Notes: generated from the sequence alone by a model not told the origin. A DNA stretch of 64,000 nt from Hyalangium minutum (GCF_000737315.1 NZ_JMCB01000019.1:124001-188000), one strand, 5' to 3'; shown: positions 26,515 through 60,114, numbered from the stretch's first letter. Numbers and translations are program-made.

Positions 26515-27480
26515 CTAACTGACGGAGCGCTCCAGGACCACCAGGGGCTTACCTCCCCCCGAGGCTCGCCACTCCGCGTTGACCCGCCGAGTGAGCTCCG
26601 CCGAGGAATCTTGGAAGCCGGCCCGTTTGAAGGTCCGCTGCGAGGCGAAGTTGTCCTCGTCGATGTCCGCGAAGATGCGCTCAGCGCCTTGCCTCCGGGC
26701 CTCCTCCAGCAGCACCTGAAGCATCCGGTACGCCACCCCCATCCTCCGAGCCCGAGGTGCCACCACCAGCGAACGCACCCAGAGCCCCTCCAGCGCCAGT
26801 CCCTCCTCGCGGTAGTCGTCCAGGTAAGCAAAGCCGCATAGCCGTCCCTGTGCGTCGAATGCCCCCGCCGCCGCCCCCCGCGAGCCGTCCGCCCGGCCCC
26901 ATCGGCCCAAAAGTTGCTGCCTCAAGAAACCCGAAGGCACCAGCAGCCGCTCTCCCGCGAAGACGAGCAATGCGTCGAGATCCTCTTCCCGTAGCAGCCG
27001 GACCTCGAGCCGTCCCAGCAAGCGCTGCCGCAGTGGCCGTGACCAACCCGCCACGGTGAAGTCCCGGAGGCGGCGGAACCATGTCCGCGCCCGAGGCCGA
27101 GCCCACAGCCCAGCGAGCACCCGCTGTCCCAGGAAAAACGTGGGACGGATGAGCCGGGGCAGCGGGAGAAGCAAGCCTCCCCGCCGCAGCGCCGTGACAC
27201 GCCCGAGTGGCTCGCCCACGGGATCCTTGCCGCCCAGCAGCGGCGCCGTCAGGAAGGGCGAGGCCGAGATCACCACGTGCGCCAGGAGCTTGCGCCCCAC
27301 CCGGACGAGCGCGACATCGCCCCGGGCCAGCTCCGCCGGCGCACAGCGCAGCACCCGGACAGAGTCCCCGCTGCGCAGGAGCGGATACAGGCTGCGGCCA
27401 GCGCCCCGCACCCACAGCTCTTGGCCAGGGGGCGTCGCTTCGATGAGATCCAGGAGATCGGCGGGGCGCCTACGGCTCAT
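26515..27480 (-). CDS. S24/S26-like peptidase domain fused to a GNAT acetyltransferase
   Basis: N-terminal GRSLYPLLRSGD...GDVALV...LAHVV; C-terminal VRSLVVAPRARRMGVA...DNFASQRTFKRAGF. Confidence 0.75.
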   Translation of the reverse strand: MSRRRPADLLDLIEATPPGQELWVRGAGRSLYPLLRSGDSVRVLRCAPAELARGDVALVRVGRKLLAHVVISASPFLTAPLLGGKDPVGEPLGRVTALRRGGLLLPLPRLIRPTFFLGQRVLAGLWARPRARTWFRRLRDFTVAGWSRPLRQRLLGRLEVRLLREEDLDALLVFAGERLLVPSGFLRQQLLGRWGRADGSRGAAAGAFDAQGRLCGFAYLDDYREEGLALEGLWVRSLVVAPRARRMGVAYRMLQVLLEEARRQGAERIFADIDEDNFASQRTFKRAGFQDSSAELTRRVNAEWRASGGGKPLVVLERSVS

Positions 27481-28225
27481 CCAGCCACCTCTTCACGAAA
27501 GCCGCCGCGGCCTCGTCCTTGCGGAAAACGAACCGCCTCAGACGAACACCCTCGGTGATGCGGGCCAGGCGCTGGAGAATGTCTCCAGACGAAGCCTCCC
27601 CAGGGAGCGGCCGGAACACCTGTCCCATCAGCGCCGCGATGGCCTCCTGGGCGGAGACCTCCTCCATCCGTTCCTCAGGGCCCTTGGCCAGCAACAGCAC
27701 CGCGGCCAGTCGCGCACGAGCCAGCGACGAGGGCAGATCCAGCTCCGAGCAGAACGGGCTGCCCTCCACTCGCCCGCCCGGATAGAGGGCCACCACCTCG
27801 TCCGAGAGCACGTCGGCCTGAGCGGCCCGGGCGCACAGCCTCGTGAAGGTGGACTTGCCGGCCCCGCTCGGGCCCACGGCCACCACGCCGCTCCCCTGGA
27901 AGGCCACGGCCGCCGCGTGCAGCAGCAGGCCGCCCTGCCGGAGCGTCGCGAGCTGCATCCCCACGCGCAGCGCCAGCTCTGTGTCGAGTTCGGCTTGGGG
28001 CAGCTCCACGCGCACCCGCTCCCCCTCTACCCGGAAGCGGGGCCCGGAGGGATGGCGCGGATCCAGCGGTGTCCCCTGCCCCTCGGCGAGCGCCCCCCCC
28101 TGCAGCACCAGGCGAAGCGGCTCCTCGGCCGTGGCACGAAAGGGCTCCAACGTGCACCGTGCACCCGCCTGGGTCAGGAGGACTTCATCCACGCCCACGC
28201 TCCAGTCCCCGAAACGCAGCCGCAT
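27470..28225 (-). CDS. HprK-related P-loop kinase (stand-alone kinase domain)
   Basis: LLLHAAAV...GPSGAGKSTF...VLSDE, the HPr kinase-like H / Walker A / DE pattern. Confidence 0.8.
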   Translation of the reverse strand: MRLRFGDWSVGVDEVLLTQAGARCTLEPFRATAEEPLRLVLQGGALAEGQGTPLDPRHPSGPRFRVEGERVRVELPQAELDTELALRVGMQLATLRQGGLLLHAAAVAFQGSGVVAVGPSGAGKSTFTRLCARAAQADVLSDEVVALYPGGRVEGSPFCSELDLPSSLARARLAAVLLLAKGPEERMEEVSAQEAIAALMGQVFRPLPGEASSGDILQRLARITEGVRLRRFVFRKDEAAAAFVKRWLDEP

Positions 28226-28236
28226 GGGCCCCCCGC

Positions 28237-28380
28237 CTACAAGCAGTTCGGGGGGTTCTCGGGATCCACGAAGCAGCTCGGCTGGAAGAGATCAGGCACG
28301 AGAAGCCGCTCCGAGCGCACCTGAGGTGGCACGTAAGGCTTCTTCTTCTTGCCGGCCGGAGCCGCCTGCGCCGTGGTCAT
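28237..28380 (-). CDS. Putative RiPP precursor peptide, 47 aa (not in ORF track): MTTAQAAPAGKKKKPYVPPQVRSERLLVPDLFQPSCFVDPENPPNCL
   Basis: Manual translation from ATG 28380 to TAG 28237. It fills the gap between two co-oriented genes (9 and 11 nt spacers) and has a KKPYxxPxV motif. Confidence 0.8.
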   Translation of the reverse strand: MTTAQAAPAGKKKKPYVPPQVRSERLLVPDLFQPSCFVDPENPPNCL

Positions 28381-28389
28381 GGGTACTCT

Positions 28390-31300
28390 CTAATAATACA
28401 CCACGACACGGGCGGGAACCGACGTATCGTCACCGATGGCCAAGTCCAGCTTTCCGTCGCCATTGAAGTCCAAGATGGCCACGCTGATCCCGAGCGAGCT
28501 GTTGGACTCCAGCTTGGACTGGGAGAAGCCGTTCTCCTGGGCCGGATCGAACTCCGCTCCCGCGACACCGCGATTGTAGAAGATGGAGGCGGCGCCGCCC
28601 GGACGGAGGTTCTGCCCGATAGCGAGATCCACGAGGCCGTCCCCATTGAGGTCACCTCGCGCCATGGCGGAGCCGAAGCGTCCGCCTCCCGTGATGAGCA
28701 GCGGCGGAGTCGTGAAGCCAGAGGCGCTCCCGTCCCGGTAGACGAACACCTTGCTCTCGGACGCCATGGTCACCGCGAGATCCAGCGCGGAGCCACCGGC
28801 CAGATCCACCCCTCCCACGGCCTCGGTACCGAAGCCGTTGGTCGCGCTACCACCCGTAGAGGAAGGCTGGTTGAGCACCTGCACGGCGTCGGACAAGGAG
28901 ACGGCGGTCCCGGGCAAGGAGCGGACGGTGGCGCCCGAGTACACGTAGACCTTGTTCTGGGACTCGTGGGACGAGGGGATCGTGAAGTCCGGCACCCCAT
29001 CCCCTGTGATGTCTCCGAGCCGGACATAGCCGCGGTTGCGCCCGAAGAAGAGGGTGCCTGCGGGCGCGGTGAAGATTTTGTCCGCTCGGCTCGACGGGAC
29101 GACGCAGGGGGCGGAGGTGTTGCAGCTCGTGCCCAGCGCGCGCCACGCGTCCTGCGAGCGCCCGTAGAAGAGGTATGCCTTGGGGGGACTCTCACCGTGC
29201 GAGCTGAGGATCAGTTCCTGCAGCCCGTCCCCGGTGATGTCGCCGATCATCTTCACGGTGCCGCCGAGAGAGGCGTTCGCGATGCTGGAAGCGTGGCGGA
29301 ACTCAATGGGACTCGCGGTGTCCACCGTGGTGCCCCGGCGGCCGAAGAAGAGGAAGGCGCGGCCGCTGGTGCCCGAGTAAGCCCGCCCACCGACCAGCAG
29401 ATCCTGCACGACATCCGTCGCGGAGTTGCCCACGTCGCCCACGTCGAAGTCCGCGCCATCGAACTGGTTGCCCTGCGGCAGCGTGATGTCCTGGCGGTTC
29501 TCGACCTGCGGGTTGGCTGAGCCGTAATAGACGTGAGTGATGCCCGGCGTGCTGGACGAAGCGCCTACCACCAGATCATCGAAGCCGTCCGCGTTGAGGT
29601 CGCCACGCGCGATGATGTTCAGCCCGAAGCTGTTGCCACCGGCGCCCGGGTTGAGGAACTCCTTGGGCGTGGGAATGTTGTTGAGCTGCTGCGGGGCCTG
29701 GAACGGCGGGTAGTTGCCCACCTCGTCGCTCGGGCGGACGAGGATGAAGTAGTTGGCCAGCGGGGGCAGCGTCAGCGTGTAGCTGGTGGCCGTGGAGGGC
29801 AGCAGCGCGCCGGTCTCCTGCTTGACCCGGGAGCCAAAGTACTCAGTGTCATTGGAGAAGCCCGTCCGGAGTTGGGAGTTGATGGTCCACCGTAGATCGT
29901 AGCCTGCGGGCACGCCGGACACGCCGTCGTCTCCGCTGGCCGTCCATGTCACGTTCACCCGGGCCGCGCGCTCCTGCCCCGCGACCAGGACCGCCGTCAT
30001 GGTGGAGGCCTGCGGAGGGATGACATCCACCGTCGCCGCCACGGTGTGGCGCGCCACGTTGCCGGAGTCCTCCTGGACGCGGATCTCGAGAGTGCCCGTG
30101 GTGGCATGAGGCAGCGTGACCGGGAGCTCCACTCGCGGGGGGAGTCCTCCCTCCGCGGGATCGGGCTCAGGGACGATGAGCTCCGGCGAGACCGGGTTGC
30201 CCCGGTAGAAGGCCTGCACTCTGCTGCCCACGCCCTGGTCTACCCGGAGGGTGAAGATCGCGTTGGCGTCACCGCCCGGCGAGCCGTCCACCACCCGGTC
30301 CGGCGCGGGCGTCGGGTACAGGTAGCGGTTGGTGCTGGCTACGAAATAGAGCGTCGTGGGAGCCGGGGAGATGGAGGTGATGACGGGCGGGGTGATGTCC
30401 ACCGTCACATCCACCGAGTCCTCCGTGGCCAGGTTGGAGAGGTTGATGACCTGCACCCGGAACTGCGTGGCCTCCCCGTCCTGGAGCGTCACGTCGAAGG
30501 AGAAGCCGCCCGTCGTTGCATCGGCGGTGGCGGTGGCCTCGGCGGTGGCCGAGGTGGCGCCGCGGAAGAGCGACACCGTGCGTCCGCGGCATTCCTGGGT
30601 GGTGCCGCGCAGGCGGTACTGCAAGCCGGGCGTCCCCGGATCCAGATCATCCCCGGCCAGCAGCTTCACCACTGCCGCGGACGGAGTGGTGAGGGTGATG
30701 TCGCAGCCCGCCTGGCGGACGTCGACATTCGCCGCCGAGGCCGTGGCCGCGTTGCCCGCCGGATCGCTGGCCTGGGCGATGACCGTCCAGACGCCCACGC
30801 GGAAGTTGAGCGTGCCCTGCGCCACACCCGAGGACACCTGAAGATCGCCGATCACCTCTTGGGTGCTCGTGTCCGTTCCCACCTGAGAGAGGATGTGGAC
30901 CGTACTCACGTCATCTGCGGTCACGTTCACCCGGACGGGGACGCTCGTGCTGTCGTAGACCGTGTTCGCCGTGGGCGAAATCAGGTCCAGCACGGGGACA
31001 TCGAGATCGACGGTGAGGGTGCGCACCACCGGCGCGCTGACGTTGCCCGAGGAGTCCACGGCGGTGGCGGTGAGCGTGTACGTCGCCTTGCCGGTACCGG
31101 GCAGGGTGAAGTCATACGCCGCCTCCAGCGCGGAGGGCGACAGATCAACGGCCTCGCCCGTGGGGGAGAGCTCCAGGTGAATGCCGTTGCCCTCGACGTC
31201 CGCGTCCGTGTTGACCTTCACCCGGAGCTGGAAGCCCGCCGCGGAGGAGGCGTCATGAGCTACGCCGAGCGACGTCCGCGTGGGCTCGACGATGCGCACT

Positions 31301-34215
31301 CCGGGCTTCACCGGGTCCATGCGGAACGCGAAGAAGGCTGCCGTGTTGATCGGGTAGAACGTCGTGGGGTTGGACAGCCGGTTCTGGTTGCCCGCGGCGT
31401 CCGTCACCGTGACGACGAGGGAATAGTCCGACGTGATGCCCTGCGGCATGGAGGAGAGCGTGACGGTGGCCTGGCCCGCGGTGGCAGTGGCCTGGCCGTA
31501 GACGATGTTCATGTTGGCGCGGTCTCGCACCTGGACCGGGCGTCCATCCTCTAGGCCATCGATGGCGACGCGCAGCTGCGGCGGACCCGTGCGGAGCTCC
31601 GCCTCGTTCATGCGCAAGTCGCCGTTGTCTCCGAGCAGTTCCACCGTCCGCACCGCCGGCTCCAAGCTGTCCACCGTGAGGGAGATCTCCCGGGACGTCG
31701 AGATGGCGCCATCATCGAGCACGGCCTTCAGGGCGTACTGCCCATCGGGGTAGGTGAAGTTCGGCGTCAGCCTGGGAACGTTCGTGGCCAGGGTGAACCA
31801 GCCCGAGCCATCCCGGCAGGGCGCGGCCCCCGCGACGAGGGCCACGCTCGTGCAGATGTCCACGACGGCATTGGGCGAGCGGTCGGGGACGTTGTACTGG
31901 AGCGCGGCCTGGATGCCGCTCTGCTCCGGGGCTGCGTCCAGACTGGCCTTATAGGTCGCAGGGGAAGTCGCGGGCAGCTCCAGGGTGATGTTCCCGGGCT
32001 GGGTGTCCACCAGCAACAGCACCGTGGCGCAGGCCACCGTCCCGCCGGGGCCAGTGAGCTCGGCGCGAAGCACATTGGCGCCCTCCTCCAGCGCCACGCT
32101 GGTGAACTCCTTCTCTCGGTCGCTCGCTGCCACGGGCATGGAGGCAAGCTCCGTCGTGCCGCGGAGCAGCCGCAGCGTCCCCGCCGCCGAGGGCGTCATC
32201 GACAGGCGCACCGTCACGAGCAGCCCTCCGCCTGTCCTGGGAGCCCCATCCGCGTTGCTCAGGTAGCGGCCCGCCGCCGGAGACTCGAACTGCAGCGAGC
32301 TGCCAGCGAAGGCCAGCGTCAGGTTCCGGCTCACGGACTGGGTGTTCCCCGCCACATCCGTCGCGGTCACCTGCAGGGTGCACGTGCCGGAGATCGGCAC
32401 GGAGACATCCCTCAAGAGTAGGTTGCCGCTGGCGTCCGCGGTGCCCGCCGCGCCCACCGCAGTGCCGCAACCGGTGGCCAGCACCGAGGCCCCCGGCTCC
32501 GTGCTCACATCGAGAGAGATCTGCATGCCCGGGCTCACCGAGGTGTCGTTCAGCTCGGAGCCCAGGGTCGTCTGCTCCGCAGGCACCCCATGCACGTTGA
32601 AGCTCAGCACCGGGGGCGTGGCGTCCACCCCCAAGGCGAGAGACTGGCTCGTGCCGCCTCCAGGGCAGGAGGCCACCAGGCGGTACTCGCCGTCCCCAGT
32701 GAGCGGCAGCGAGATCTGCGCTGTCCCCGAGGAAGCCGTCCCGGAAGCGCGGCCCTTCTCCACGCGGTTCTGGTCATACGCCACCACGGTGACGGGACCG
32801 TTGCCCGACTCCACGCGCACCGAGAGGGGCGAGGTGCGCGCCATGGCGCCCTCCAACGGGGAGACGATGCCGCAGAGGGGCCGCCCTGTGGAGACGGTAA
32901 CGCTCTCCGCCGCGCACCGCTCGATGCCCGCAGCATTGCGCACACAGGCCTGCACGGTGTTGGCGCCCTCGGCGAGCTGGGCCGTGAAGGAGGCCTCCTT
33001 GAAGTTGCCCGAGGCCACCGTCACCGCCCGCTGGGGGCGCGCGAACTGGCCGCTCACGGAGGTGAACAACCGCACTTCGGAGCCCACGGGCAGCGAGTCC
33101 GCCTGCACGGTCACGGGCGCCTGCACGCCCTCGAGCCCCGGATCCGCGTCCGAGGAGATGGTCCGCTGCACCACGAGCCGCATGGTGGGCGCGGTGCTCG
33201 CGACGGTGACGGGGATCTGCCGCGTGGTGATGTTGCCGCCCGCATCCGCCAGGCGCAGGGTGAAGGTGTAGTTCCCATCCGCCGGAACGGTGACCGCGGG
33301 GAACGACACGTTCCCAGCATCCACCGGCGTGGAGAGCTCCGTGGCTCCGGGACGCGACAGGGTGGCTGTCACTCCCGGCTCGGTACAGCCCACGGTGGCG
33401 TCGATCCGGAACGTCGTGGAGGCCACGGGCCCCACCGGCGACACCACCTCCACGCGCGGCGCCACCGTGTCCAGCTGGATGTTGCGCTTGCCGGACGTCA
33501 CCTCCTTGTCGCCATTGCGGACCACCGCGTAGCAGGCGGCCTGCTCAGCCTCGCACGCGGATTGCGCGAGCGTCACCGACACCTGCGTGAGCCCGCTGCT
33601 GTTCACCGTGAAGTCCGTGGGGGGCACGCCGCAGGCCTGCTCGCAGTAGAGCGTGCCCGTCTTCCCGGCCAGCCCCACGCTCTTCACGGAGAAGTGGAGC
33701 TGGTAGCCCGCCGTGTCCGGATCCGCGTCATCCGCCTCGCGGAGCACCTGGCCCTCGGCGGGCTGCGTCAGATCCACGCTCGGCGGCTCGGTGGACACCG
33801 TGACGGTGATGCGCTGGGTGGCCGTGCGGTGCGAGCCCGCCTCTTCCACCGTCACTTGCAGCAGGTTGGTGCGCGGCTGAAGCACCGTGCCGGGGAAGCG
33901 CACCGTGCCGCCCTCGATGACCGCCGGGGGCCCCGCCGTCCACGTCTGCTCGCTGGGCGTGCGCACCTCCAGCTTGGCGCTGACCAGCGTCACCGCCCGG
34001 CCCGCCGTGTCGCTCGCCGACGCCACCACCTCGTACTGGAAGCCGTCCGTGGCCGGATCCACGTCGTCCGACAGCGTCAGCCGCTGTCCGTCCTTGGGCG
34101 TGTCGAAGGCCACCGCGAGCTCGGACTCGACGGGCGGCTCTCCGCAGTTGCAGCCCGTGGCGCCCCACACCAGGACCAGGCTCAGCAGCAGCCCTTGCGA
34201 TACCGATCGGCGCAT
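28390..34215 (-). CDS. Giant surface lipoprotein, 1941 aa: Ig-like repeats, FnIII-like domain and C-terminal FG-GAP/VCBS propeller
   Basis: Lipobox WGATGC at Cys22; repeated D-x-x-x-P domain boundaries (DTVAP, DATPP, DITPP, DVIPP); GDLNADGFDD, GDITGDG, GDLNGDGLVD and DFNGDGKLD repeats. Confidence 0.88.
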   Translation of the reverse strand: MRRSVSQGLLLSLVLVWGATGCNCGEPPVESELAVAFDTPKDGQRLTLSDDVDPATDGFQYEVVASASDTAGRAVTLVSAKLEVRTPSEQTWTAGPPAVIEGGTVRFPGTVLQPRTNLLQVTVEEAGSHRTATQRITVTVSTEPPSVDLTQPAEGQVLREADDADPDTAGYQLHFSVKSVGLAGKTGTLYCEQACGVPPTDFTVNSSGLTQVSVTLAQSACEAEQAACYAVVRNGDKEVTSGKRNIQLDTVAPRVEVVSPVGPVASTTFRIDATVGCTEPGVTATLSRPGATELSTPVDAGNVSFPAVTVPADGNYTFTLRLADAGGNITTRQIPVTVASTAPTMRLVVQRTISSDADPGLEGVQAPVTVQADSLPVGSEVRLFTSVSGQFARPQRAVTVASGNFKEASFTAQLAEGANTVQACVRNAAGIERCAAESVTVSTGRPLCGIVSPLEGAMARTSPLSVRVESGNGPVTVVAYDQNRVEKGRASGTASSGTAQISLPLTGDGEYRLVASCPGGGTSQSLALGVDATPPVLSFNVHGVPAEQTTLGSELNDTSVSPGMQISLDVSTEPGASVLATGCGTAVGAAGTADASGNLLLRDVSVPISGTCTLQVTATDVAGNTQSVSRNLTLAFAGSSLQFESPAAGRYLSNADGAPRTGGGLLVTVRLSMTPSAAGTLRLLRGTTELASMPVAASDREKEFTSVALEEGANVLRAELTGPGGTVACATVLLLVDTQPGNITLELPATSPATYKASLDAAPEQSGIQAALQYNVPDRSPNAVVDICTSVALVAGAAPCRDGSGWFTLATNVPRLTPNFTYPDGQYALKAVLDDGAISTSREISLTVDSLEPAVRTVELLGDNGDLRMNEAELRTGPPQLRVAIDGLEDGRPVQVRDRANMNIVYGQATATAGQATVTLSSMPQGITSDYSLVVTVTDAAGNQNRLSNPTTFYPINTAAFFAFRMDPVKPGVRIVEPTRTSLGVAHDASSAAGFQLRVKVNTDADVEGNGIHLELSPTGEAVDLSPSALEAAYDFTLPGTGKATYTLTATAVDSSGNVSAPVVRTLTVDLDVPVLDLISPTANTVYDSTSVPVRVNVTADDVSTVHILSQVGTDTSTQEVIGDLQVSSGVAQGTLNFRVGVWTVIAQASDPAGNAATASAANVDVRQAGCDITLTTPSAAVVKLLAGDDLDPGTPGLQYRLRGTTQECRGRTVSLFRGATSATAEATATADATTGGFSFDVTLQDGEATQFRVQVINLSNLATEDSVDVTVDITPPVITSISPAPTTLYFVASTNRYLYPTPAPDRVVDGSPGGDANAIFTLRVDQGVGSRVQAFYRGNPVSPELIVPEPDPAEGGLPPRVELPVTLPHATTGTLEIRVQEDSGNVARHTVAATVDVIPPQASTMTAVLVAGQERAARVNVTWTASGDDGVSGVPAGYDLRWTINSQLRTGFSNDTEYFGSRVKQETGALLPSTATSYTLTLPPLANYFILVRPSDEVGNYPPFQAPQQLNNIPTPKEFLNPGAGGNSFGLNIIARGDLNADGFDDLVVGASSSTPGITHVYYGSANPQVENRQDITLPQGNQFDGADFDVGDVGNSATDVVQDLLVGGRAYSGTSGRAFLFFGRRGTTVDTASPIEFRHASSIANASLGGTVKMIGDITGDGLQELILSSHGESPPKAYLFYGRSQDAWRALGTSCNTSAPCVVPSSRADKIFTAPAGTLFFGRNRGYVRLGDITGDGVPDFTIPSSHESQNKVYVYSGATVRSLPGTAVSLSDAVQVLNQPSSTGGSATNGFGTEAVGGVDLAGGSALDLAVTMASESKVFVYRDGSASGFTTPPLLITGGGRFGSAMARGDLNGDGLVDLAIGQNLRPGGAASIFYNRGVAGAEFDPAQENGFSQSKLESNSSLGISVAILDFNGDGKLDLAIGDDTSVPARVVVYY

Positions 34216-34280
34216 ACGTCTCTCTTCCTCTCGGTGGGCTCCGGCGGCCCACCACGGCATTCCCGGCGCGGGCCCGGCCC

Positions 34281-34652
34281 TCACGGCCCGAGTACCAGCA
34301 CCTTTTTCTCTACGAGGAGTCTTACGAAGGCGGCCGTGTCCTCCCGGCATGCCTGCGGCTCCACCTCGAACTCGTCACACAGCACCGCCACGATGTCCGC
34401 CACCGTCCGCCGTCCGTCCACCAGTTCCAGGATGCGCTCGGCCACCTCGGACACCCGCCCCTGTGCATCCTCGAACGTGTGCAGGAACTCGTCTGGCCCG
34501 GCCGCCATGAGCCTTCCCGACACGCGCTGCAGGCCCGCCTCCGGGTGCAGCCGGGGGATGGCGCGTAGCACGTCCTGGCTCGCGCTCGCGAGCCGCTCGA
34601 ATTCCTTCCCTCCGGCCAGGGGCCCTCCCGGGCTCACGAAGTGTGCAGCCAT
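34281..34652 (-). CDS. PqqD-family RiPP recognition element (RRE) protein
   Basis: SEVAERILELVDGRRTVADIVAVLCDEFEVEPQACREDTAAFVRLLVEKKVL, a typical PqqD winged helix. ATG at 34652. Confidence 0.88.
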   Translation of the reverse strand: MAAHFVSPGGPLAGGKEFERLASASQDVLRAIPRLHPEAGLQRVSGRLMAAGPDEFLHTFEDAQGRVSEVAERILELVDGRRTVADIVAVLCDEFEVEPQACREDTAAFVRLLVEKKVLVLGP

Positions 34653-41503: not shown

Positions 41504-41694
41504 AAGCGCTCCTTCAACCTGGGAGTGTTGGCGAAGTCTAGCAGAAGCGACCCCTCACAGGCCCATCTGGTGCTCGGGCATGAGGGCATAGCCATCAGCG
41601 CCGACAAGAAGTATGCGTTCTTCTTCCCGGGCGACGTGCCTGGCGGGAAGTGGGTGCGCTACCGCATCATCGACAAGTCACACGCGAGCACACC

Positions 41695-42090
41695 ATGACG
41701 GAGAACACAGGAGAACCCTCGGGCACCCGTCACGTGAGGATCAACCGCGGGGACGTGTTCTGGATCGCGCCCGATGACTCGCGCGGGCCTGTCCCGGGGT
41801 ACTCCCATCCCCACGTGGTGGTGCAGGACGACGTCTTCAACCACTCGCGCATCACCACCGTGGTCGTATGCGCATTGACGTCGAACCTGCACCGGGCCAC
41901 CGAGCCGGGGAACGTCCTGCTCGAGGAGGGCGAGGGCAACCTCCCCAAGCAGAGCGTGGTGGTCGTGTCGCAGATCTCCTCGGTCGACAAGACCCACCTG
42001 GGGGAACGCATCGGGTCGCTGTCCAGCGCACGGGTGGATCAAATCCTGGACGGCCTGCGCTTCCAACAGGTGTCGTTCTTCGAGCGGTAG
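41695..42090 (+). CDS. PemK/MazF-family toxin
   Basis: RGDVFW...HPHVVVQDDVFN...TVVVCALTS...GNV...LPKQSVVVVSQISSVDK...IGSL. Confidence 0.85.
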   Translation: MTENTGEPSGTRHVRINRGDVFWIAPDDSRGPVPGYSHPHVVVQDDVFNHSRITTVVVCALTSNLHRATEPGNVLLEEGEGNLPKQSVVVVSQISSVDKTHLGERIGSLSSARVDQILDGLRFQQVSFFER

Positions 42091-42123
42091 CGGCGCTCAG
42101 ACAGCGCTCGAAGTGCTTGGAGG

Positions 42124-43941
42124 CTACGCCGCCGCTATTCTCAGCGGCGTGTCACGCCCCAGGGCGATGAAAGGCGCCCAGCTGTGGGGGTGGGGATGGC
42201 TTTGGCGCACCAGACGCATCGCCGCCTGCAATGCGCTGCAGCGGCCCTGCCCCTCCCGCAGAAAACCGTAATACGCCTCCATCAGCGTCCGGGTCGTCTC
42301 ATCGTTCACCTTCCACAGACTCGTCACCACGGTCTCCGCTCCCGCGATGATGAAGGCCCGGCGCAGCCCGTACACACCCTGTCCCAGCTTGACCTCGCCG
42401 CGTCCGGTGTCGCACGCGGAGAGCACCACCAACTGCGTGCCCCAAAGGTTCATCCCCGCCAGTTCCAGCGCCGTCACCCAGCAGTTGTCGGCAGGGGCCG
42501 GGTCCGAGGAAGAGGCCAGCGCCAACGCCGAGCACAACAACGGATCGGAGGGGCGTGGTGCACAGGCATCCGTTCCCAGTACTCCGAAGTGAACCATGGC
42601 GCGCTGGACCGCGAGCCCAGGAGACGGATCCCCCTGGAAGGAGCCATGGGTGGCCAGGTGCAGCACTCCGGGCGCGGAGAGGCTCAGCAGCCGCTCCTTG
42701 GTCGCCTCCGGTCCCAGGAAGAGCTGGGCCTGCGGCAACAAGCGCTGGATGGCCTCGGCCTCCCGGCGGGTGCCCGGCAGCGGCACGCACGTCCGCTGCG
42801 CCACGTTGTGCGAGGAGGACTCGCTCACCGCCGGCGCTTCCGCGCAGAAGTCCTCCTGCCCAGAGCCGCTGAAACCCGGGTCCGCCAGCACGACCACCGA
42901 GCGGGAGACAGGCACGTCCTCCACCCGAGGCAACAGCTCCTTGCCGGAGGTGAGATAGATGAAGTCGAAGGAGTCGATGAGGAACTGGCTCCCATCGTGC
43001 AACGCGGCGAACGGCACGAAGGAGAGCTGGCCATCCGTGGACAGGAAGAGGCGCCGGACTCCTCTCACCAGCGCATGGATGGGCTGAAAGGCCAGCTCAT
43101 ACAGCTGCTGGGCCATGCCCAGGTAGGCGGCATCCCGGTTGGCCAGGGCGTTGCGCAGTTCCGAGGCAGCCTTGTCGATGAACTCGGCCCAGCCCAGATC
43201 CACGACGCTCACGCGGGCATCCGGGAAGAGGACAAGCGCCAGGTAGCGGAGCCGCGCGGTGTTCCGCGACTCGGAAGTGTCAGGCTGAGGCCCGAACGGA
43301 GGCTCCCGGTATGCCACCAGCTCGACGAGGGCGCCGTCTCGCGGGAGGGCCGCGGCGACCTGCTCGATGATGTGCTCGGCGGAAGGCAGCGCGGCGCGGG
43401 CGCGCAGCGGCGCCGAGCGCCGGGCCAGCTCGGCCTCGAGCGCCTCCCCTTGCGCGGCAAGCGACTGGAGACGCTGCTGGTAGTCCGCGGGGGACTGCCA
43501 GCCCACGCGCTGGTTCGCCAGGGTGGAGAGCTCCTCGCGCAGCGCACACAGCCGCGCGAAGGCCTCGCAGGCCCGCGCGCCCAGGCGCTGGTAGATGGCC
43601 TGGGAGGTGTCAGCGGCCTCATCGAGGGCGCGGCCCTTGAGCAGCAGCACGGCCGCGAGCGCCAAGCGCTGCACGCGCACGTCCTCCGGGTGAGCGCGCA
43701 ACAGCGCGTAGAGGCGCTCCTCGCCAGCGCGGAGACGTTGGAGAAAGCGGGCCAGCCGGGACGTGGAGAACGCGAGCGCTTCCTGGCGCAGTCGCTGCTC
43801 GGACAAGGTGAAGGCGCGCCAGAGCAAGACCAGCGCATCGTCCAGACGCGCCTGAGCCAGACACAACTCAGCCATGTCGTACAGCTTCTCCGCGATCAGC
43901 GGATCGCGGACGCTTCCCCCGAGAACTGGCAGCATGTCCAT
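42124..43941 (-). CDS. CHAT (caspase-like) protease with a short TPR-like N-terminus
   Basis: Catalytic HLATHG and LSACDTG; GVYGLRRAF; TSLWKV; WAPF. Confidence 0.88.
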   Translation of the reverse strand: MDMLPVLGGSVRDPLIAEKLYDMAELCLAQARLDDALVLLWRAFTLSEQRLRQEALAFSTSRLARFLQRLRAGEERLYALLRAHPEDVRVQRLALAAVLLLKGRALDEAADTSQAIYQRLGARACEAFARLCALREELSTLANQRVGWQSPADYQQRLQSLAAQGEALEAELARRSAPLRARAALPSAEHIIEQVAAALPRDGALVELVAYREPPFGPQPDTSESRNTARLRYLALVLFPDARVSVVDLGWAEFIDKAASELRNALANRDAAYLGMAQQLYELAFQPIHALVRGVRRLFLSTDGQLSFVPFAALHDGSQFLIDSFDFIYLTSGKELLPRVEDVPVSRSVVVLADPGFSGSGQEDFCAEAPAVSESSSHNVAQRTCVPLPGTRREAEAIQRLLPQAQLFLGPEATKERLLSLSAPGVLHLATHGSFQGDPSPGLAVQRAMVHFGVLGTDACAPRPSDPLLCSALALASSSDPAPADNCWVTALELAGMNLWGTQLVVLSACDTGRGEVKLGQGVYGLRRAFIIAGAETVVTSLWKVNDETTRTLMEAYYGFLREGQGRCSALQAAMRLVRQSHPHPHSWAPFIALGRDTPLRIAAA

Positions 43942-44010
43942 CTCCAGCGGGCCCCCATGTACTTGCCCGCTGAGAAGAAGAGACTGCCGCGTTCAGAATC
44001 ATTCAAGAAT

Positions 44011-47000
44011 TCAGCGGCCACCCCTGGCACAGACACGCACCCCCGTGAGCAGGTCGCTCTGTGTGGGATCGCCCGCAGTGTGATTCGCCATATTGGCGGA
44101 GTACACGTCGTAGTACCAAGCCCCTCCTCGAAGGGAGATCGAGCCCCGCTCGGGCGTCACGGAGCGGGTGAGCTCGAAGGCATTGCCCACGGTGTCCACC
44201 AACCCGAAGGGGCTGGTCGAGTTCGGGTGCGAGCCCACCATGTCAGGCCCGTAATCCAAGGGAATCCGGCCATAGGTGGTGTCGATGTTTGCGTCGTCCG
44301 GCAACAGCACCTCTCCATGAGGGAAGCTGCGGCCGTCCACGCCGCGCGCCGCGTACTCCCACTCCAGCGCGGTGCACAGGCGCGCCCCGGGCAGGCGCCC
44401 CGTACCGTCCAGCCACGAGAAGTAGTCCTCGAGATCCCTGACCGAGATGCCCGTCAGCGGAAACCGCCGCCAATCCGCGGTGGAGCGCCGGGTCCTCGTG
44501 GGGTAGCGGAAGAGCTCGCCCTCCGCCGCCGTGGAGACCTTCTGGCTCGAATGATGGAAGGAGAAGCTCCAGCCGCCGCCAGGCGTCTTGCGCAGCACCA
44601 CCGCGCGACCCTTGTCATTGAAGCGCGCCTGCGCGAGGAGCTGCCTCGCGGAGTGCCCCGGTGGAAGGGAGTCGAGGTACATCAACCAGTCGCCGAACGT
44701 CACTTCCGTCCGCCCGATGAAGTACCCCTGGGTCAGGCAGACCCGGTGCATCGGCGGACTGGTCATGGCCACCCTCAACACCTCGGGATCGGCACTCCCC
44801 TGGAGGAAGCATCCGGGCGGAACGTACACATAGCCCTCGGGGATGGAGGCGGGCAGGTCCACGAGGAGCTGCTCCCCGGCCCCGTGGGACAGGAGCACGA
44901 GCAGCTCCACGGGCGCGGAGCTGGGGTGCGTGATGCGCAGCTGGTAGGAGCCCTCGGGCAGGCGCAGGCCCCGCAGTGGGGTCAGGCCCCAGGTGCCCGC
45001 TTCCGGAACCCGCTCCAGCCGCTCCCCCTCCGCGCCGCGGATGGAGCGCTGGATCGTCACGGTGGCTCCCGGAGGCTCCGTCACCAGCTCGAGCTCGGCG
45101 GGAGCCTGGAATCGCTCCCACCACCGCCGCGCCTCACTCGAGACCTCGGCCATCCGCTCCAGGCTCTGCACCCGCTCCTCGCGCTCACGCTGCTGGTGGA
45201 AGCGCTCCGCCAGGAGAATTCGCTCGTAGGTGACTTCCGCCAGCAGCTCCCGCGTTTCCGGGTTCCCCCTGTCACGCTCCAGCGCCCTCTCGAGCTCCCG
45301 GCTGGCGCGAGCATAATCGCGCTCAGCCTGGTCCCTCAGCGCCAGCGCCCTGGCCCATTTTCCCTCGTCGGAGTCCTGGAGGGGATCAGGCCCCGGAGAG
45401 CCCCGCCCGTCGAACAGCGCGAGCGCCTCCTCGCGGAGGTCACCGGCCTGCCGGGCAAGGCCGCGCCCCGTGGCGAACGCTTCCAGCGCCAGCCCTTGGT
45501 GCGTGGCGATGAAGCGTGTGTCCTCGCGGTACGTCTGTAGGCGGAGCCCAGCATAGACCGCGGCGAGGGCCAGCACGACAGCCAGCGCGGCCACCCAGCG
45601 TCCCCACCGCTGGCGCACCACCACACGGCGGGAGGCGGCCAGGAAGGAGCGCTCCCGAAGCCCCAAGGTGGAAGGATCGAGCAGGCTCGCCTCGGCCAAC
45701 TGGCGCTGTCCCCAGAGCACCTCCCGGGCCCCTCCCAGCCGCTCCCAGTCGGCGCTCGCGTCCTCGAGCCGCTTGCGCACCACCCGGTGGCCAATGTCGC
45801 CATCCAGCCAATCGCGCAGGGTGCCCCACCCTTCGATCAGCGAGTCATGCGCGATCTCCCAGCGGGCCTCGCCGCCCACGGTGCGCATGTGCAGCAGACG
45901 GCCCTCGACGAGCGCGCGAAGCGCGGCGCGGGCGCTCTCCTCCGAGCTTCCCAGGAGATCCTCCTCGCCTCGCTCGACCCGCGTGCCCTCGGCCGTGACC
46001 AACCTCAAGAGCAGCCCCCGCGCCGCCGCGCGCCCAGCCGGCCGCAGGCGCAGGAGCACCCCATCGGCATGCCGAGACAGCGCTCCGGCCACTCCTCCCA
46101 TCTGCTCGAGCGCCGCCTGGGTGATGCAGCCTCGCGCGGCGTCGCGCCGCTCCCACAACTCGGCGAGCGCGAACTGCAGAAGGGGCAGATTCCCCATGCC
46201 CCGGGCCATGGAGGCCATGAGCACCTGGATGAGCGCCTCGGACTCGAACGCCACACCGCGGCGGCGGGCGGGACCGATGATGGCCTCGCGCACCCCCTCG
46301 GGGGACAAGGGCCGCAGGAGGTAGAGCGCGCGCTCCGCCTCCTCGCCCAGGCCAGGCAGCGCGCACACCCGCGTCAGGAAATCTCCCCGCACCGCCATGA
46401 GCACACGCACACCCGCCGTCGGCAGGGACAGCTCCCCGAGGATGCGGGCGAAGTGCTCCGCCTGCGCTGGCTCCGCAATCGTGATGAGCTCCTCGATCTG
46501 ATCGATAAAGAGGAGCAGGCCGCGACCGGACCGGTATGCCTCGCGCAGCGCTCGCCCCAGCCAGGAGGGCTTGTCCTTCAGCAGCAGGACAAGCTCTTCC
46601 TCCTTGTGCCCCAGCCGGGGCGCGAGAGCGGCGGCCAGTGCCTCCAGCGGGCGCCGTCCAGGCCAGAGCGTGACCGTGACGGTCTCCCGGCCTTCCTCCA
46701 AAACTCCCGCGACCACCTGCGGCAGCACCCCCGCGCGGCACAGCGAGGACTTGCCGACACCCGAGTCTCCCGCGACGAGGACCAGAGGCTGATAGCGGAG
46801 CCGGTCCAGGACAGCGTGAATGTCTGCATCGCGTCCGAAGAAGAGAGCCCGGTGCTCGGCCTCGAAGGGCTCCAGCCCTCGGTAGGGATTGCCAGCAGCC
46901 AGGGGCACGGGCGCGACAATTCGCGTCAGGCGCTCCAGCGCCTCGCAGAGCGCCTCGGCCGAGGCGAAGCGCTCCCGCGCATCCGCCGCGCAGCACCGGT

Positions 47001-47937: not shown

Positions 47938-48011
47938 AGCCTCTCAAACGACGGGGTACCCGGCGCTGGCTCGATTGCGAGCATCGCAAGGGACATGGTA
48001 CAGCCAGGAGA

Positions 48012-50042: not shown

Positions 50043-50207
50043 GGTGCTCTCTCCGGTGAAGTCACGTCGGTGGGGCCTGAACCGGCCCTCACGGGTACAG
50101 AGCCAGTGTCGGCCCGAATCATTCAGAAAAACGGACGGGGTCCAGCGCTCGCCTCCTGCACCCATGAGAGAATGAGAGCTCTTGGGTAGGCAGGAGGTCT
50201 CGCACAC

Positions 50208-51155: not shown

Positions 51156-51188
51156 TCTCGTGAAGCTCTCGAGCTACGGCACCGCAGG

Positions 51189-51695
51189 TCACCTCTTGAA
51201 GAAGCCCCCTTCGGGGAACGCTTGGGTCGCCAGCCTCTGCAGCAAGGCGAAGTCATCCAGGAAGCCCGCTTCTTGGAGGTATGTGCGCTTCGAGTCGTAG
51301 AAGGCGAGCTTCTCGCAACTGAAGCAAGCGACCACGTCCAGCCAATCCGTGCCGCGCCAGAAGCGCAGGGTGATGTCCGGGTTGAACATGCACTTGCGAC
51401 GCGGCCTGGGCTCGAAGTCCTTCGGTGACACCCAGATCTTCCCCAAGGCCTCGCGATCCTCCTTGCTGAGCGCGGGGCCCTCGCGGGTGAGGAGGTAGGG
51501 TCCGCTGAACTTGCGGGTGTCCGGCTCGGGAGGCAGTTGGTCCCAGTTCTGGTCCACATCCGAGAGGAAGATCTGCACCCGATCCGGCTGGCGAAAGAAC
51601 TGCTCCAGGGTGGGTGAGGCGGGAGCCTTCGGTGCCACATTCGGTGCCACAACAGGCGCGGAGGACAGGCACAGGATCAGGAGCGCGGTGAGCAT
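51189..51695 (-). CDS. Hypothetical secreted protein
   Basis: MLTALLILCLSSAP signal; KCMFNP...VACFSC. Confidence 0.55.
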   Translation of the reverse strand: MLTALLILCLSSAPVVAPNVAPKAPASPTLEQFFRQPDRVQIFLSDVDQNWDQLPPEPDTRKFSGPYLLTREGPALSKEDREALGKIWVSPKDFEPRPRRKCMFNPDITLRFWRGTDWLDVVACFSCEKLAFYDSKRTYLQEAGFLDDFALLQRLATQAFPEGGFFKR

Positions 51696-51823
51696 GGGTC
51701 TCCAGGCTACATGGATTGAGGTGGGGTTTGCCGCTTCGCAGCCTCCAATGCTCGGAGCACTGGAGCCTAGGACTTGACGTCGTCGCGGCCGACGACCGTC
51801 ATCATCGTGGCGCTCAGGGTGGC

Positions 51824-51846: not shown

Positions 51847-51893
51847 TCTTGAGAGAGGCTCAATTCGTGTAGGAGCAGACGGTCTGCGTCTGA

Positions 51894-60107: not shown

Positions 60108-60114
60108 GGCCGCC

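What the first reader, a model, noticed from the sequence alone, without database searches (positions are those of the whole stretch)
26515..34652. Candidate undescribed RRE-dependent peptide-modification (RiPP-like) system wrapped around a giant surface lipoprotein
Seen in the sequence: five tightly spaced co-oriented genes, PqqD/RRE, a 1941-aa Ig/FG-GAP lipoprotein, a 47-aa peptide, an HprK-like kinase and an S24/S26 peptidase-GNAT fusion. The last four are separated by 9 nt, 11 nt and an 11-nt overlap. Established: stand-alone PqqD proteins bind YxxP-type leaders in lasso pathways, and HprK-like kinases phosphorylate paeninodin-type lasso precursors. Here there is no lasso cyclase, B2 transglutaminase protease, radical SAM, YcaO or LanM in the cassette. 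Inference: the RRE presents the peptide for phosphorylation, leader cleavage and N-acylation, giving a linear or disulfide-closed product tied to a surface adhesin/receptor.
Basis: partly seen in the sequence, partly recalled or inferred. Interest (0 to 1): 0.92.

Follow-up and report, generated by a model that had tools for sequence, protein, structure and literature searches.

The report
Myxobacterial peptide-maturation cassette with giant lipoprotein
Five co-oriented genes encode a small peptide with a conserved leader, the proteins predicted to bind, phosphorylate and cleave it, and a giant surface lipoprotein inherited with them; the set resembles a peptide natural-product pathway described in 2026 only from Bacillota.

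Summary
Five minus-strand genes lie at 26515-34652 with exactly the reported spacing.

Each assignment holds:
- The PqqD protein is a lasso-B1-type RRE.
- The 47-aa ORF belongs to a family of about 93 small proteins. They share an invariant KKPYxxPxVRSExxLVPDLF leader (YxxPxV) and a hypervariable tail that usually has two Cys.
- The P-loop protein is HprK/ScmC-like.
- The N-domain of the last protein is an archaeal/Sec11-type (S26B) signal-peptidase-like domain with a Ser30-His68-Asp86 candidate triad, fused to a GNAT.

The order RRE, lipoprotein, peptide, kinase recurs in every peptide-bearing locus whose upstream end is on the contig. It also recurs in an unrelated genomic neighbourhood, where the peptidase is fused to a second PqqD.

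The GNAT is dispensable. The peptidase is standalone in Archangium. Myxococcus and Corallococcus keep an orphan peptidase-GNAT, and most of these have lost triad residues.

The closest known system is the linear polyphosphorylated peptide (LPP) family (Nat Commun 2026). The cassette differs from it by phylum, by the conserved giant lipoprotein, by the GNAT fusion, and by having no exporter or NTP-transferase.

Verdict: a new variant of a known kind. The chemistry and the lipoprotein's role are inferred, not shown.

The parts
34281..34652 (-). Discrete PqqD-family RiPP recognition element (RRE), 123 aa from the ATG. Orthologues suggest a possible shorter form from the GTG at 34571.
   Evidence: Pfam PqqD 6.3e-13. 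A profile of orthologues hits the lasso RRE TbiB1 best in the PDB (1.3e-7). It is 50-85% identical in every cassette locus where this end is on the contig. The same subfamily is fused to the peptidase domain in P0354, P0356 and P0361.
28390..34215 (-). Giant surface lipoprotein, 1941 aa. It has a signal peptide with a lipobox (LVWGATG-C), Ig-like (Big_13) repeats and a C-terminal FG-GAP beta-propeller with DxNxDG calcium-type motifs.
   Evidence: Pfam FG-GAP 1.6e-22, Big_13 4.3e-17, FG-GAP_3 7e-15. A homologue of 1130-1960 aa with a lipobox always lies between the RRE and the peptide. In L025 and L026 it overlaps the peptide ORF.
28285..28344 (-). Conserved leader segment of the peptide, K13-F32 (KKPYVPPQVRSERLLVPDLF). 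It contains the YxxPxV RRE-binding-type motif.
   Evidence: Y, P, V, R and F are invariant across nine loci. The motif is kept across about 93 clusters. In the 20-codon leader of nine loci, third-codon positions carry the most differences (302, against 187 and 124 at positions 1 and 2), and 194 of 408 differing codon pairs are synonymous.
28237..28380 (-). Whole 47-aa precursor-like peptide gene. Lys-rich N-terminus, conserved leader, and a hypervariable tail QPSCFVDPENPPNCL (28240-28284) with two Cys.
   Evidence: Profile search found about 93 clusters of 40-57 aa down to E 3e-21, all annotated hypothetical. 81 of 92 tails have exactly two Cys and 9 have none. All 92 have Ser or Thr within three residues after the conserved Phe.
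27470..28225 (-). HprK-like (ScmC-family) P-loop kinase, 251 aa.
   Evidence: Precomputed Pfam PF27840 ScmC. NCBIfam HprK_rel_A/B 9e-6 and ScmC 9e-4, all below cut-off. LLHA...GPSGAGKST...LSDE is invariant across 27 homologues. The family profile matches HPr kinase 1jb1 over 53 residues at 6.9e-5, whereas other PDB hits cover only the ~22-residue P-loop.
27136..27480 (-). N-terminal S26B-like (archaeal/Sec11/SipW-type) signal-peptidase-fold domain of the last protein, aa 1-115. Candidate catalytic residues are Ser30, His68 and Asp86. It has no membrane anchor.
   Evidence: AF2 model pLDDT 78.6. Nearly all of the 50 Foldseek PDB hits listed are clan SF: LexA, UmuD', lambda cI, SipA, SpsB, LepB (best E 1.3e-3, TM 0.55-0.57). 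The broad family profile hits human SEC11C and SEC11A at 2.3e-6 and 3.8e-6, with Ser30 and His68 aligned to their catalytic Ser and His. 36 of 150 family representatives hit Pfam Peptidase_S24, best 1.4e-8. The triad is SHD in 28 of 28 cassette-linked homologues and substituted in 11 of 17 on long contigs with no cassette match.
26518..27012 (-). C-terminal GNAT N-acetyltransferase domain of the same protein, aa ~157-321. The acetyl-CoA motif RRMGVA is intact.
   Evidence: Pfam Acetyltransf_1 4.9e-14. PDB profile hits to GNATs down to 1.5e-10. Foldseek hits to ArsN, YncA, RimI and Naa-type N-acetyltransferases. The domain is not universally present with the cassette.
27482..33353 (-). Exchangeable block: the distal ~85% of the lipoprotein gene, the peptide gene and the kinase gene.
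   Evidence: blastn against L005 is 82.7% identical and continuous from 37378 down to 33354. It then collapses to 65-72% patches and resumes at 27481, next to the peptidase-GNAT start at 27480, at 79.8%. Protein identities are PqqD 84, lipoprotein 47, kinase 41 and peptidase-GNAT 80. L005 carries a different peptide tail type.

Best explanation
This is an RRE-dependent peptide-maturation cassette that works on the same logic as the linear polyphosphorylated peptide (LPP) pathway.

Proposed steps:
1. The discrete PqqD/RRE binds the YxxPxV motif in the conserved leader of the 47-aa precursor.
2. The HprK-like kinase phosphorylates a Ser or Thr of the precursor. The likeliest site is the one always found one to three residues after the conserved Phe at the leader/tail junction; the invariant Ser/Thr of VRSE is the alternative.
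3. The cytoplasmic Sec11/SipW-type Ser-His peptidase domain removes the leader while the RRE presents it. The small-x-small pattern after the Phe (TPS, QPS, GSG, ASG) fits signal-peptidase specificity.
4. In the window's main type this would release a short acidic, Pro-rich tail of about 12 residues (CFVDPENPPNCL) that can close a disulfide.
5. In this lineage the fused GNAT may acetylate the new N-terminus, but that step is optional across the family.

The giant Ig/FG-GAP lipoprotein is a conserved fifth member whose distal part is exchanged together with the peptide and the kinase. I infer that it is the partner (receptor, carrier or target) of the mature peptide at the cell surface.

Shown here: gene content, family assignments, conservation, fusions and co-variation. 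Inferred: every chemical step, the cleavage site, export and the lipoprotein's role.
For: Component identities:
- RRE: (TbiB1, which binds YxxPxL leaders, is the best PDB match).
- Kinase.
- Peptidase fold and Ser/His alignment to SEC11A/C.
- S24/S26 Pfam hits among relatives.

The peptide family has a conserved leader and a hypervariable tail, the architecture typical of RiPP precursors.

Gene order is conserved across deep divergence (lipoprotein down to 31-35% identity, kinase 37-41%), with tight or overlapping junctions.

The same five components occur in an unrelated neighbourhood, between CtaA/UbiA and other genes, in L029/L030. There the peptide is KKRRYERPVLISQ... (YxxPxL) and the peptidase is fused to a second PqqD.

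Peptidase::PqqD fusions exist in three family representatives. Their PqqD part matches the window RRE at 1.5e-29.

Ser30/His68/Asp86 are intact in 28 of 28 cassette-linked homologues and in all cassette loci (one has Cys for Ser). They carry varied substitutions in 11 of 17 homologues on long contigs with no cassette match, and His68 is Gln in 8 of 13 orphan loci.

Precedent: LPP uses a discrete RRE, a YxxPxV leader, an HprK-like kinase acting on Ser3 of the core, and an RRE-dependent archaeal-type SPase I with catalytic S29/H68/D93 (PMC13381572).
Against: - No experiment and no expression data.
- No exporter or NTP-transferase in the cassette or anywhere in the window, so it is unclear how a product would reach the lipoprotein.
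- L003 has the RRE, lipoprotein, peptide and peptidase-GNAT but no kinase.
- Several cassette-less genomes, including M. xanthus, keep an intact Ser-His-Asp peptidase-GNAT. The protein must therefore have, or be able to have, another role.
- In L023 and L025 the peptidase-GNAT lies 2.6-4 kb away, next to a Na/Ca exchanger and EamA.
- The window protein itself scores below the Pfam S24 threshold.
- I could not measure triad geometry in the model.
- The extended LPP leader motif (LxHQxIxFET) is absent.
- Nine tails have no Cys, so a disulfide is not general.
- The Ser/Thr-after-Phe pattern has a substantial chance expectation per sequence (about 0.4) and the sequences are related.
- The cassette classification rests on matching contig lengths. 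At least one homologue scored as cassette-less (P0048, whose species carries the cassette in L027) is probably misclassified; it is among the six that keep SHD.
Confidence: 0.6

Rival explanations
1. The real functional unit is four genes: RRE, lipoprotein, peptide and kinase. On this view the peptidase-GNAT is an unrelated resident gene of this chromosomal site, working with the downstream EamA exporter (for example as a small-molecule or amino-acid N-acetyltransferase). The peptide is then not leader-cleaved by it.
For: An orphan peptidase-GNAT sits at the same site, followed by EamA and MBL, in Myxococcus, Corallococcus and most Pyxidicoccus. In L023 and L025 it is separated from the kinase and sits beside the Na/Ca exchanger and EamA. 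The mosaic breakpoint against L005 falls next to the peptidase-GNAT start, placing that gene in the conserved backbone. The closest GNAT matches are YncA/ArsN/phosphinothricin-type amino-acid acetyltransferases.
Against: A peptidase domain alone, without a GNAT, directly follows and overlaps the kinase gene in Archangium and L031. In the unrelated L029 context the peptidase again follows the kinase and is fused to a PqqD of the cassette's own subfamily. The triad residues are substituted only where no cassette is detected.
Confidence: 0.15
2. The cassette does not make a released natural product. The small protein, RRE, kinase and peptidase form a cytoplasmic accessory or regulatory module for biogenesis of the giant lipoprotein, for example by controlling its expression, export or anchoring. 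Alternatively the processed peptide becomes attached to, or is a dedicated ligand of, the lipoprotein.
For: There is no exporter in any locus examined. The lipoprotein is always the second gene and is translationally coupled to the peptide (9 nt here; overlaps in L025, L026 and L029). The lipoprotein, peptide and kinase are replaced as one block. In L003, L023 and L025 the cassette directly follows etfBA in the same orientation, which suggests housekeeping-like expression.
Against: No known lipoprotein biogenesis factor resembles these proteins. The leader/variable-tail architecture and the RRE + kinase + leader-peptidase set match a demonstrated RiPP pathway (PMC13381572). The peptide has no signal sequence or lipobox of its own.
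Confidence: 0.2
3. The lipoprotein is a passenger. It was inserted once between the RRE and the precursor in an ancestor and is kept only by linkage, with no functional tie to the peptide pathway.
For: Nearly all loci share one chromosomal site (ETF...EamA/MBL), so most of the synteny could be vertical inheritance. No known RiPP pathway includes an FG-GAP lipoprotein.
Against: The same order, with a homologous lipoprotein (34% identity over 1400 aa), recurs in a different neighbourhood in L029. The gene persists across lineages in which the downstream genes were rearranged. Its junction with the peptide gene is tight or overlapping. It co-varies with the peptide and kinase in the L005 mosaic. 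When Myxococcus and Corallococcus lost the system, all four genes went together.
Confidence: 0.05

Closest known systems
Linear polyphosphorylated peptide (LPP) RiPP clusters of Bacillota: LppA/K/B/S/D/N (Popov et al., Nat Commun 2026, PMC13381572)
   Same: - A discrete PqqD-type RRE.
- A precursor with a conserved N-terminal YxxPxV motif and a variable C-terminus.
- An HprK-like kinase.
- A leader peptidase of the archaeal/Sec11/SipW Ser-His type. LppS uses S29/H68/D93; here the candidates are S30/H68/D86.
- No macrolactam cyclase.
- A cell-envelope association (capsule loci there, a surface lipoprotein here).
   Different: - Myxococcota rather than Bacillota; the paper describes LPP as restricted to Bacillota.
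- The extended leader motif LxHQxIxFETxxS is absent.
- Tails are 11-32 aa and mostly have two Cys, against a 45-aa core in the one LPP characterised.
- No MsbA-type exporter and no NTP-transferase.
- The peptidase is a soluble domain that is fused to a GNAT, standalone, or fused to a PqqD.
- A giant Ig/FG-GAP lipoprotein is a conserved core gene.
- The RRE is not specially close to the deposited paeninodin/LPP-type RRE entries: 9x90 scores 2e-4 and 9x8z 0.74, against TbiB1 at 1.3e-7.
Paeninodin-type phosphorylated lasso peptide clusters (RRE B1, B2 protease, cyclase C, HprK-like kinase)
   Same: A B1-type RRE that recognises [Y/W]xxPx[L/V]. An HprK-like tailoring kinase. The RRE presents the leader to a protease. 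Protease::RRE fusions exist, analogous to fused lasso B proteins.
   Different: There is no Asn-synthetase-like cyclase and no transglutaminase-fold B2 protease in the window. There is no Thr at the -2 position at the lasso spacing from the Tyr. The C-terminal residue is not Ser, so paeninodin-style C-terminal phosphorylation is excluded.
SynChlorMet (SCM) cassette and related PqqD-ScmC-radical SAM/SPASM clusters (TIGR04248/04249)
   Same: The kinase belongs to the Pfam ScmC family and is paired with a PqqD protein. A distant homologue (35% identity) sits in exactly such a cassette in L024.
   Different: No radical SAM/SPASM enzyme is present. NCBIfam ScmC and ScmD scores are far below cut-off (18.6 against 125, and 19.7 against 100).
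Eukaryotic/archaeal signal peptidase catalytic subunits (SEC11A/C; SipW of B. subtilis), MEROPS S26B
   Same: Shared fold, the GxSMxP nucleophile motif and a His general base about 38 residues downstream.
   Different: No transmembrane anchor. It is cytoplasmic and fused to a GNAT. The presumed substrate is a leader peptide presented by an RRE, not a Sec signal peptide.

Membership tests
LPP (linear polyphosphorylated peptide) RiPP clusters | Discrete PqqD-type RRE encoded in the cluster | tested here: met
   Pfam PqqD 6.3e-13. The profile hits lasso RRE TbiB1 at 1.3e-7.
LPP (linear polyphosphorylated peptide) RiPP clusters | Precursor with a conserved N-terminal YxxPxV(LxHQxIxFETxxS) motif and a variable C-terminus | tested here: inconclusive
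   YxxPxV and a variable tail are present in about 93 family members. The extended LPP consensus beyond YxxPxV is not present.
LPP (linear polyphosphorylated peptide) RiPP clusters | HprK-like kinase | tested here: met
   Pfam ScmC family. HprK core motifs are invariant. HPr kinase is the only PDB match in the 60 listed that clearly extends beyond the P-loop. No direct comparison with LppK was possible.
LPP (linear polyphosphorylated peptide) RiPP clusters | Archaeal-type (SipW/Sec11-like, Ser-His-Asp) signal peptidase I as leader peptidase | tested here: met
   The family profile hits SEC11C/A at 2.3e-6 and 3.8e-6 with Ser30 and His68 aligned to the catalytic residues. The fold matches clan SF. 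The domain is soluble and fused, unlike LppS. Activity was not tested.
LPP (linear polyphosphorylated peptide) RiPP clusters | MsbA-like ABC exporter and NTP-transferase in the conserved core | tested here: not met
   Neither is found among the ORFs scanned in the window or the genes listed in the related loci.
LPP (linear polyphosphorylated peptide) RiPP clusters | Polyphosphorylation of a core Ser and RRE-dependent leader cleavage | not testable with these tools
   Needs co-expression and mass spectrometry.
Lasso peptide clusters | Asn-synthetase-like macrolactam cyclase (C) and transglutaminase-fold leader protease (B2) | tested here: not met
   No such Pfam families among the ORFs scanned across the window.
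SynChlorMet / PqqD-ScmC-radical SAM cassettes | Radical SAM/SPASM maturases next to ScmC and ScmD | tested here: not met
   No radical SAM protein in the window. The NCBIfam equivalog scores are far below cut-off.
HPr-rel-A system (TIGR04352/TIGR04353) | Kinase scoring above the HprK_rel_A equivalog cut-off | tested here: not met
   25 bits against a cut-off of 200.
Peptidase clan SF, family S26B | SF fold, Ser nucleophile in GxSMxP, His general base | tested here: met
   Ser30 is kept in over 90% and His68 is invariant in the 35-sequence family alignment. SHD occurs in 106 of 150 representatives. In the window protein the motif is GRSLYP (Leu for Met).

The most novel reading that the evidence does not exclude
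The RiPP-type machinery is dedicated to the giant lipoprotein. The processed (phosphorylated or disulfide-closed) peptide would be the cognate ligand or covalent decoration of the FG-GAP propeller. The lipoprotein-peptide-kinase block would exist as exchangeable allelic types, giving myxobacteria a polymorphic surface recognition system, such as a kin or self/non-self signal-receptor pair. That would be the first case of a RiPP pathway built around a surface receptor.
Probability: 0.15. Interest if true: 0.9.

Novelty: new variant of a known kind. Interest (0 to 1): 0.72.

Why it matters
If confirmed, this would take the newly described logic of RRE + HprK-like kinase + Sec11-type leader peptidase out of Bacillota and into Myxococcota.

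It would also define a family of about 93 unannotated precursor peptides and a family of at least 700 soluble S26B-like peptidase domains. These occur standalone, fused to a GNAT, or fused to an RRE.

It would show a peptide-maturation pathway that is genetically inseparable from a giant integrin-like surface lipoprotein. The biological role of LPPs and paeninodins is unknown; a conserved surface partner gives a concrete, testable hypothesis for what such peptides do.

The block-wise exchange of lipoprotein, peptide and kinase suggests diversifying selection at the cell surface.

There is also a practical annotation point. NCBI names the kinase 'potassium transporter TrkH' and JGI often names the peptidase-GNAT 'mycothiol synthase'. 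Both names look wrong.

Tried and rejected
- Pfam and PDB sequence searches with the window's peptidase N-domain alone, or with a narrow alignment of it, gave nothing significant. Only the structure model and a broad family profile resolved it.
- A Foldseek search with the full-length model returned only GNAT hits.
- I rejected a Ser-Lys (S24-type) dyad. Lys64 is replaced by R, Q, E or G in orthologues, whereas His68 is conserved.
- The PADLOC defence-system scan was negative.
- Promoter and terminator scans were uninformative: counts were at or below the shuffle expectation.
- I rejected a lipobox or Sec signal in the peptide. It has no hydrophobic h-region, and Cys-free subtypes exist.
- I rejected paeninodin-style C-terminal Ser phosphorylation, because the C-terminal residues are L, C, I, A, E, P or Q.
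- I looked for kinase/peptide-subtype co-variation across metagenomic pairs by matching contig lengths. Two apparent exceptions (P0134-P0242 and P0138-P0212) were left unresolved, so I make no general claim. Only the L005 mosaic is asserted.
- Literature searches for this gene combination in myxobacteria found only generic antiSMASH 'RRE-containing' flags, for example in Citreicoccus inhibens M34, which carries the cassette.
- The extra genes in L025 between the kinase and the peptidase-GNAT have no Pfam hits and are not extra peptidase copies.
Full report
**1. The observation**

The window is about 68% G+C. By nearest relatives it comes from a Hyalangium-like member of the Myxococcaceae.

Five genes lie on the minus strand:
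- PqqD, 34281-34652.
- A 1941-aa lipoprotein, 28390-34215, with signal peptide MRRSVSQGLLLSLVLVWGATG|C.
- A 47-aa ORF, 28237-28380.
- A 251-aa P-loop protein, 27470-28225.
- A 321-aa protein, 26515-27480.

I read the junctions base by base. The gaps are 9 nt and 11 nt, and the last two genes overlap by 11 nt, exactly as reported. PqqD and the lipoprotein are 65 nt apart.

The flanks are ordinary metabolism genes. Upstream are transaldolase, acyl-CoA dehydrogenase, etfBA and a divergent Coa1-like gene. Downstream are an EamA transporter, an MBL-fold hydrolase and a polysaccharide deacetylase.

The ORFs with coding-like composition that I scanned across the 64-kb window include no lasso cyclase, B2 protease, radical SAM, YcaO, LanM, ABC exporter or NTP-transferase.

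**2. What each component is**

*RRE.* Pfam PqqD scores 6e-13. A profile of the orthologues finds the lasso RRE TbiB1 as its best solved relative (1.3e-7 over nearly the whole domain). TbiB1 is a B1-type RRE of the kind that binds YxxPxL leaders (established knowledge).

*Lipoprotein.* It has FG-GAP and Big_13 domains. Every homologue has a lipobox signal peptide and ends in an aromatic residue.

*Kinase.* The local Pfam copy sees only the P-loop. The protein carries the newer family PF27840 (ScmC) and weak NCBIfam matches to HprK_rel_A/B and ScmC. Across 27 homologues down to 22% identity, the invariant residues are LLHA...GxSGxGKST...LSDE. By my knowledge of HPr kinase, these correspond to its His, P-loop and Asp core. 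HPr kinase is the only PDB match in the 60 listed that clearly extends beyond the P-loop (53 residues, 6.9e-5).

*Last protein, C-terminal half.* This is a clear GNAT.

*Last protein, N-terminal 115 residues.* These were the uncertain part.
- The window sequence scores only E 0.077 against Pfam Peptidase_S24.
- An AF2 model of the domain (pLDDT 78.6) matches almost only clan-SF peptidases in the PDB: LexA, UmuD', lambda cI, SipA, SpsB and LepB, with TM 0.5-0.57.
- An exhaustive profile search found 703 cluster representatives. Of the best 150, 36 hit Peptidase_S24 (best 1.4e-8), 2 hit Peptidase_S26, 39 carry a GNAT and 3 carry a PqqD domain.
- The family consensus is GxSMxPLL...AH.
- A profile of 35 diverse members hits the human signal-peptidase catalytic subunits SEC11C and SEC11A at 2.3e-6 and 3.8e-6. 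Ser30 aligns to the GSM Ser and His68 to the VHR His.
- The Lys expected for a Ser-Lys enzyme is not conserved.

The domain is therefore a soluble archaeal/Sec11/SipW-type (S26B-like) peptidase domain. Its candidate catalytic residues are Ser30, His68 and Asp86.

**3. The peptide is a real, conserved gene**

Homologues sit at the same position in nine loci. A profile built from them retrieved about 93 clusters of 40-57 aa, all annotated hypothetical. They share KKPYxxPxVRSE[KR]xLVPDLF. Y, P, V, R and F are invariant in the nine-sequence alignment.

After this leader comes a hypervariable tail of 11-32 residues, rich in P, C, D, T, G, S and E. Eighty-one of 92 tails have exactly two Cys, and 9 have none.

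Within the leader, nucleotide differences concentrate at third-codon positions: 302, against 187 and 124 at positions 1 and 2.

YxxPxV is the motif type recognised by lasso and LPP RREs (PMC13381572).

All 92 parsable members have Ser or Thr within three residues after the conserved Phe. The three residues after that Phe follow a small-x-small pattern (and by inspection).

**4. Conservation of the arrangement**

The order RRE, lipoprotein, peptide, kinase is found in:
- Hyalangium-clade MAGs (L004-L007);
- Archangium violaceum (L021);
- Pyxidicoccus xibeiensis (L022);
- Citreicoccus (L027);
- several metagenomic contigs (L023, L025, L031);
- in part on truncated contigs (L026, L028).

Identity falls as low as 31-35% for the lipoprotein and 37-41% for the kinase. 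L003 has the same order but no kinase.

Nearly all of these loci share one chromosomal site downstream of etfBA, so vertical inheritance alone could explain much of the synteny. Three results go beyond that.

(a) L029/L030 carry the same five components in a different neighbourhood (CtaA and UbiA upstream). The components are a 93-aa PqqD, a 1775-aa FG-GAP/Big_13 lipoprotein, a 62-aa peptide (KKRRYERPVLISQ..., which is YxxPxL, with four Cys), a 214-aa HprK-like protein, and a peptidase domain fused to a second PqqD.

(b) Peptidase::PqqD fusions occur in three family representatives. Their PqqD part matches the window RRE at 1.5e-29. This Rosetta-stone link parallels fused lasso B proteins.

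(c) Against L005, DNA identity is 82.7% through etf, Coa1, PqqD and the first ~287 codons of the lipoprotein gene. It collapses through the rest of the lipoprotein, the peptide and the kinase. It resumes next to the peptidase-GNAT start codon at about 80%. L005 has a different tail type (STGGQPCDPFCDGLPPMPDA). So the distal lipoprotein, the peptide and the kinase form one exchangeable block.

**5. Status of the peptidase-GNAT**

Evidence against membership:
- Myxococcus, Corallococcus and most Pyxidicoccus have lost the RRE, lipoprotein, peptide and kinase but keep the peptidase-GNAT at the same site.
- In L023 and L025 the gene lies 2.6-4 kb downstream of the kinase.

Evidence for membership of the peptidase domain:
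- In Archangium and L031 a standalone peptidase of 141-145 aa, with no GNAT, follows and overlaps the kinase gene.
- In L029 the peptidase is fused to a PqqD.
- Ser30/His68/Asp86 are SHD in 28 of 28 homologues that appear to share a contig with a kinase or peptide homologue, judged by matching contig lengths. They carry varied substitutions (GHD, CHD, CQD, DQD, GQE, SQD, DQA, GQG, GRD) in 11 of 17 homologues on contigs of at least 100 kb with no cassette match.
- At the level of individual loci, all 12 cassette loci counted (11 related loci plus the window) keep [S/C]-H-D, while 8 of 13 orphan loci have His68 replaced by Gln.

The variety of substitutions suggests several independent relaxations. 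Even so, the sequences are related, and M. xanthus keeps SHD without a cassette.

My reading is that the peptidase domain belongs to the system. The GNAT is a lineage-specific addition that can also serve another role.

**6. Comparison with what is known**

Popov et al. (Nat Commun 2026, PMC13381572) described linear polyphosphorylated peptides in Bacillota. Their findings:
- The core genes are a discrete RRE (LppB), an HprK-like kinase (LppK), an archaeal-type SPase I (LppS, catalytic S29/H68/D93), an MsbA-like exporter and an NTP-transferase.
- Precursors carry YxxPxVLxHQxIxFETxxS.
- LppK polyphosphorylates Ser3 of the core.
- LppS cleaves after T-1 only when LppB is present.
- The authors describe LPPs as restricted to Bacillota and their function as unknown.

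The window's cassette shares four of these features: the RRE, the YxxPxV leader, the HprK-like kinase and the Sec11/SipW-type peptidase. It lacks the exporter, the NTP-transferase and the extended leader motif. It adds the lipoprotein and the GNAT.

It is not a lasso cluster, an SCM/radical-SAM cassette or an HPr-rel-A system (see the membership tests). Whether the resemblance to LPP reflects common descent or convergence is open. The RRE profile is closer to TbiB1 than to the PqqD-family chaperone entries 9x90 and 9x8z, which may be the structures from that study.

**7. Mechanism proposed**

The steps are: RRE binding of the leader; kinase action on a junction-proximal Ser or Thr; RRE-assisted leader removal by the Ser-His peptidase; optional N-acetylation; and a short tail, often able to form a disulfide, that interacts with the lipoprotein's distal domains.

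The chemistry, the cleavage site, the route out of the cell and the lipoprotein's role are all inferences.

The main weaknesses are these:
- No locus contains an exporter.
- L003 has no kinase.
- Intact orphan peptidase-GNATs exist.

**8. Verdict**

The system is best filed as a new variant of the LPP-type logic of RRE, kinase and signal-peptidase-like leader peptidase. It is distinguished by its phylum, by a conserved giant surface lipoprotein that co-varies with the peptide and kinase, and by modular fusions of the peptidase.

Noticed in passing
window 27482-33353, against L005 4051-9999: There is a sharp mosaic. The flanks, PqqD and the first ~287 codons of the lipoprotein gene are about 80-83% identical in DNA to a related MAG. 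The distal lipoprotein, the peptide and the kinase are a different allele (47% and 41% protein identity, and a different peptide tail). The downstream breakpoint lies next to the peptidase-GNAT start codon.
   Followed up: partly
window 27470-28225 and 26515-27480 (public annotations of homologues): NCBI names the HprK/ScmC-like kinase homologues 'potassium transporter TrkH'. JGI names many peptidase-GNAT homologues 'mycothiol synthase' or 'RimJ/RimL'. Both look like misannotations that have propagated.
   Followed up: no
window 41584-47943: A MazF/PemK-like toxin gene (41584-42090, + strand) lies beside a CHAT-domain protease (42124-43992, -) and a 1310-aa protein combining a Ser/Thr kinase, an nSTAND1 NTPase and an FGE-sulfatase domain (44011-47943, -). 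This looks like a conflict or signalling module.
   Followed up: no
window ~50000-58600 and 58665-62190: G+C drops to 0.63-0.66 between about 50 and 58 kb. ORFs in or just beyond this stretch have no Pfam hit (50190-51155, 57331-58608, 58665-60107). They are followed by an AMP-binding protein (60073-61800) and a DUF4280 protein (61801-62190), which from memory is PAAR-like. The region may be horizontally acquired.
   Followed up: no
L024 9732-12289: A distant kinase homologue (35% identity) sits in a classical PqqD - ScmC - radical SAM/SPASM - 66-aa ORF cassette. The same RRE + HprK-like pair is therefore used with different maturases in other RiPP-like systems.
   Followed up: no
window 34569-34652: The PqqD start is uncertain.
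   Followed up: partly
RRE family alignment A8 (window PqqD residues in LCDEFEVEPQAC): Two Cys are invariant in this RRE subfamily, including the PqqD domains fused to the peptidase. Their significance is unknown.
   Followed up: no
L025 4966-6173: In one divergent locus, two genes with no Pfam hit (282 aa and 118 aa) directly follow the kinase, ahead of SDR and methylmalonyl-CoA-mutase-like genes. They may be lineage-specific additions to the cassette.
   Followed up: partly
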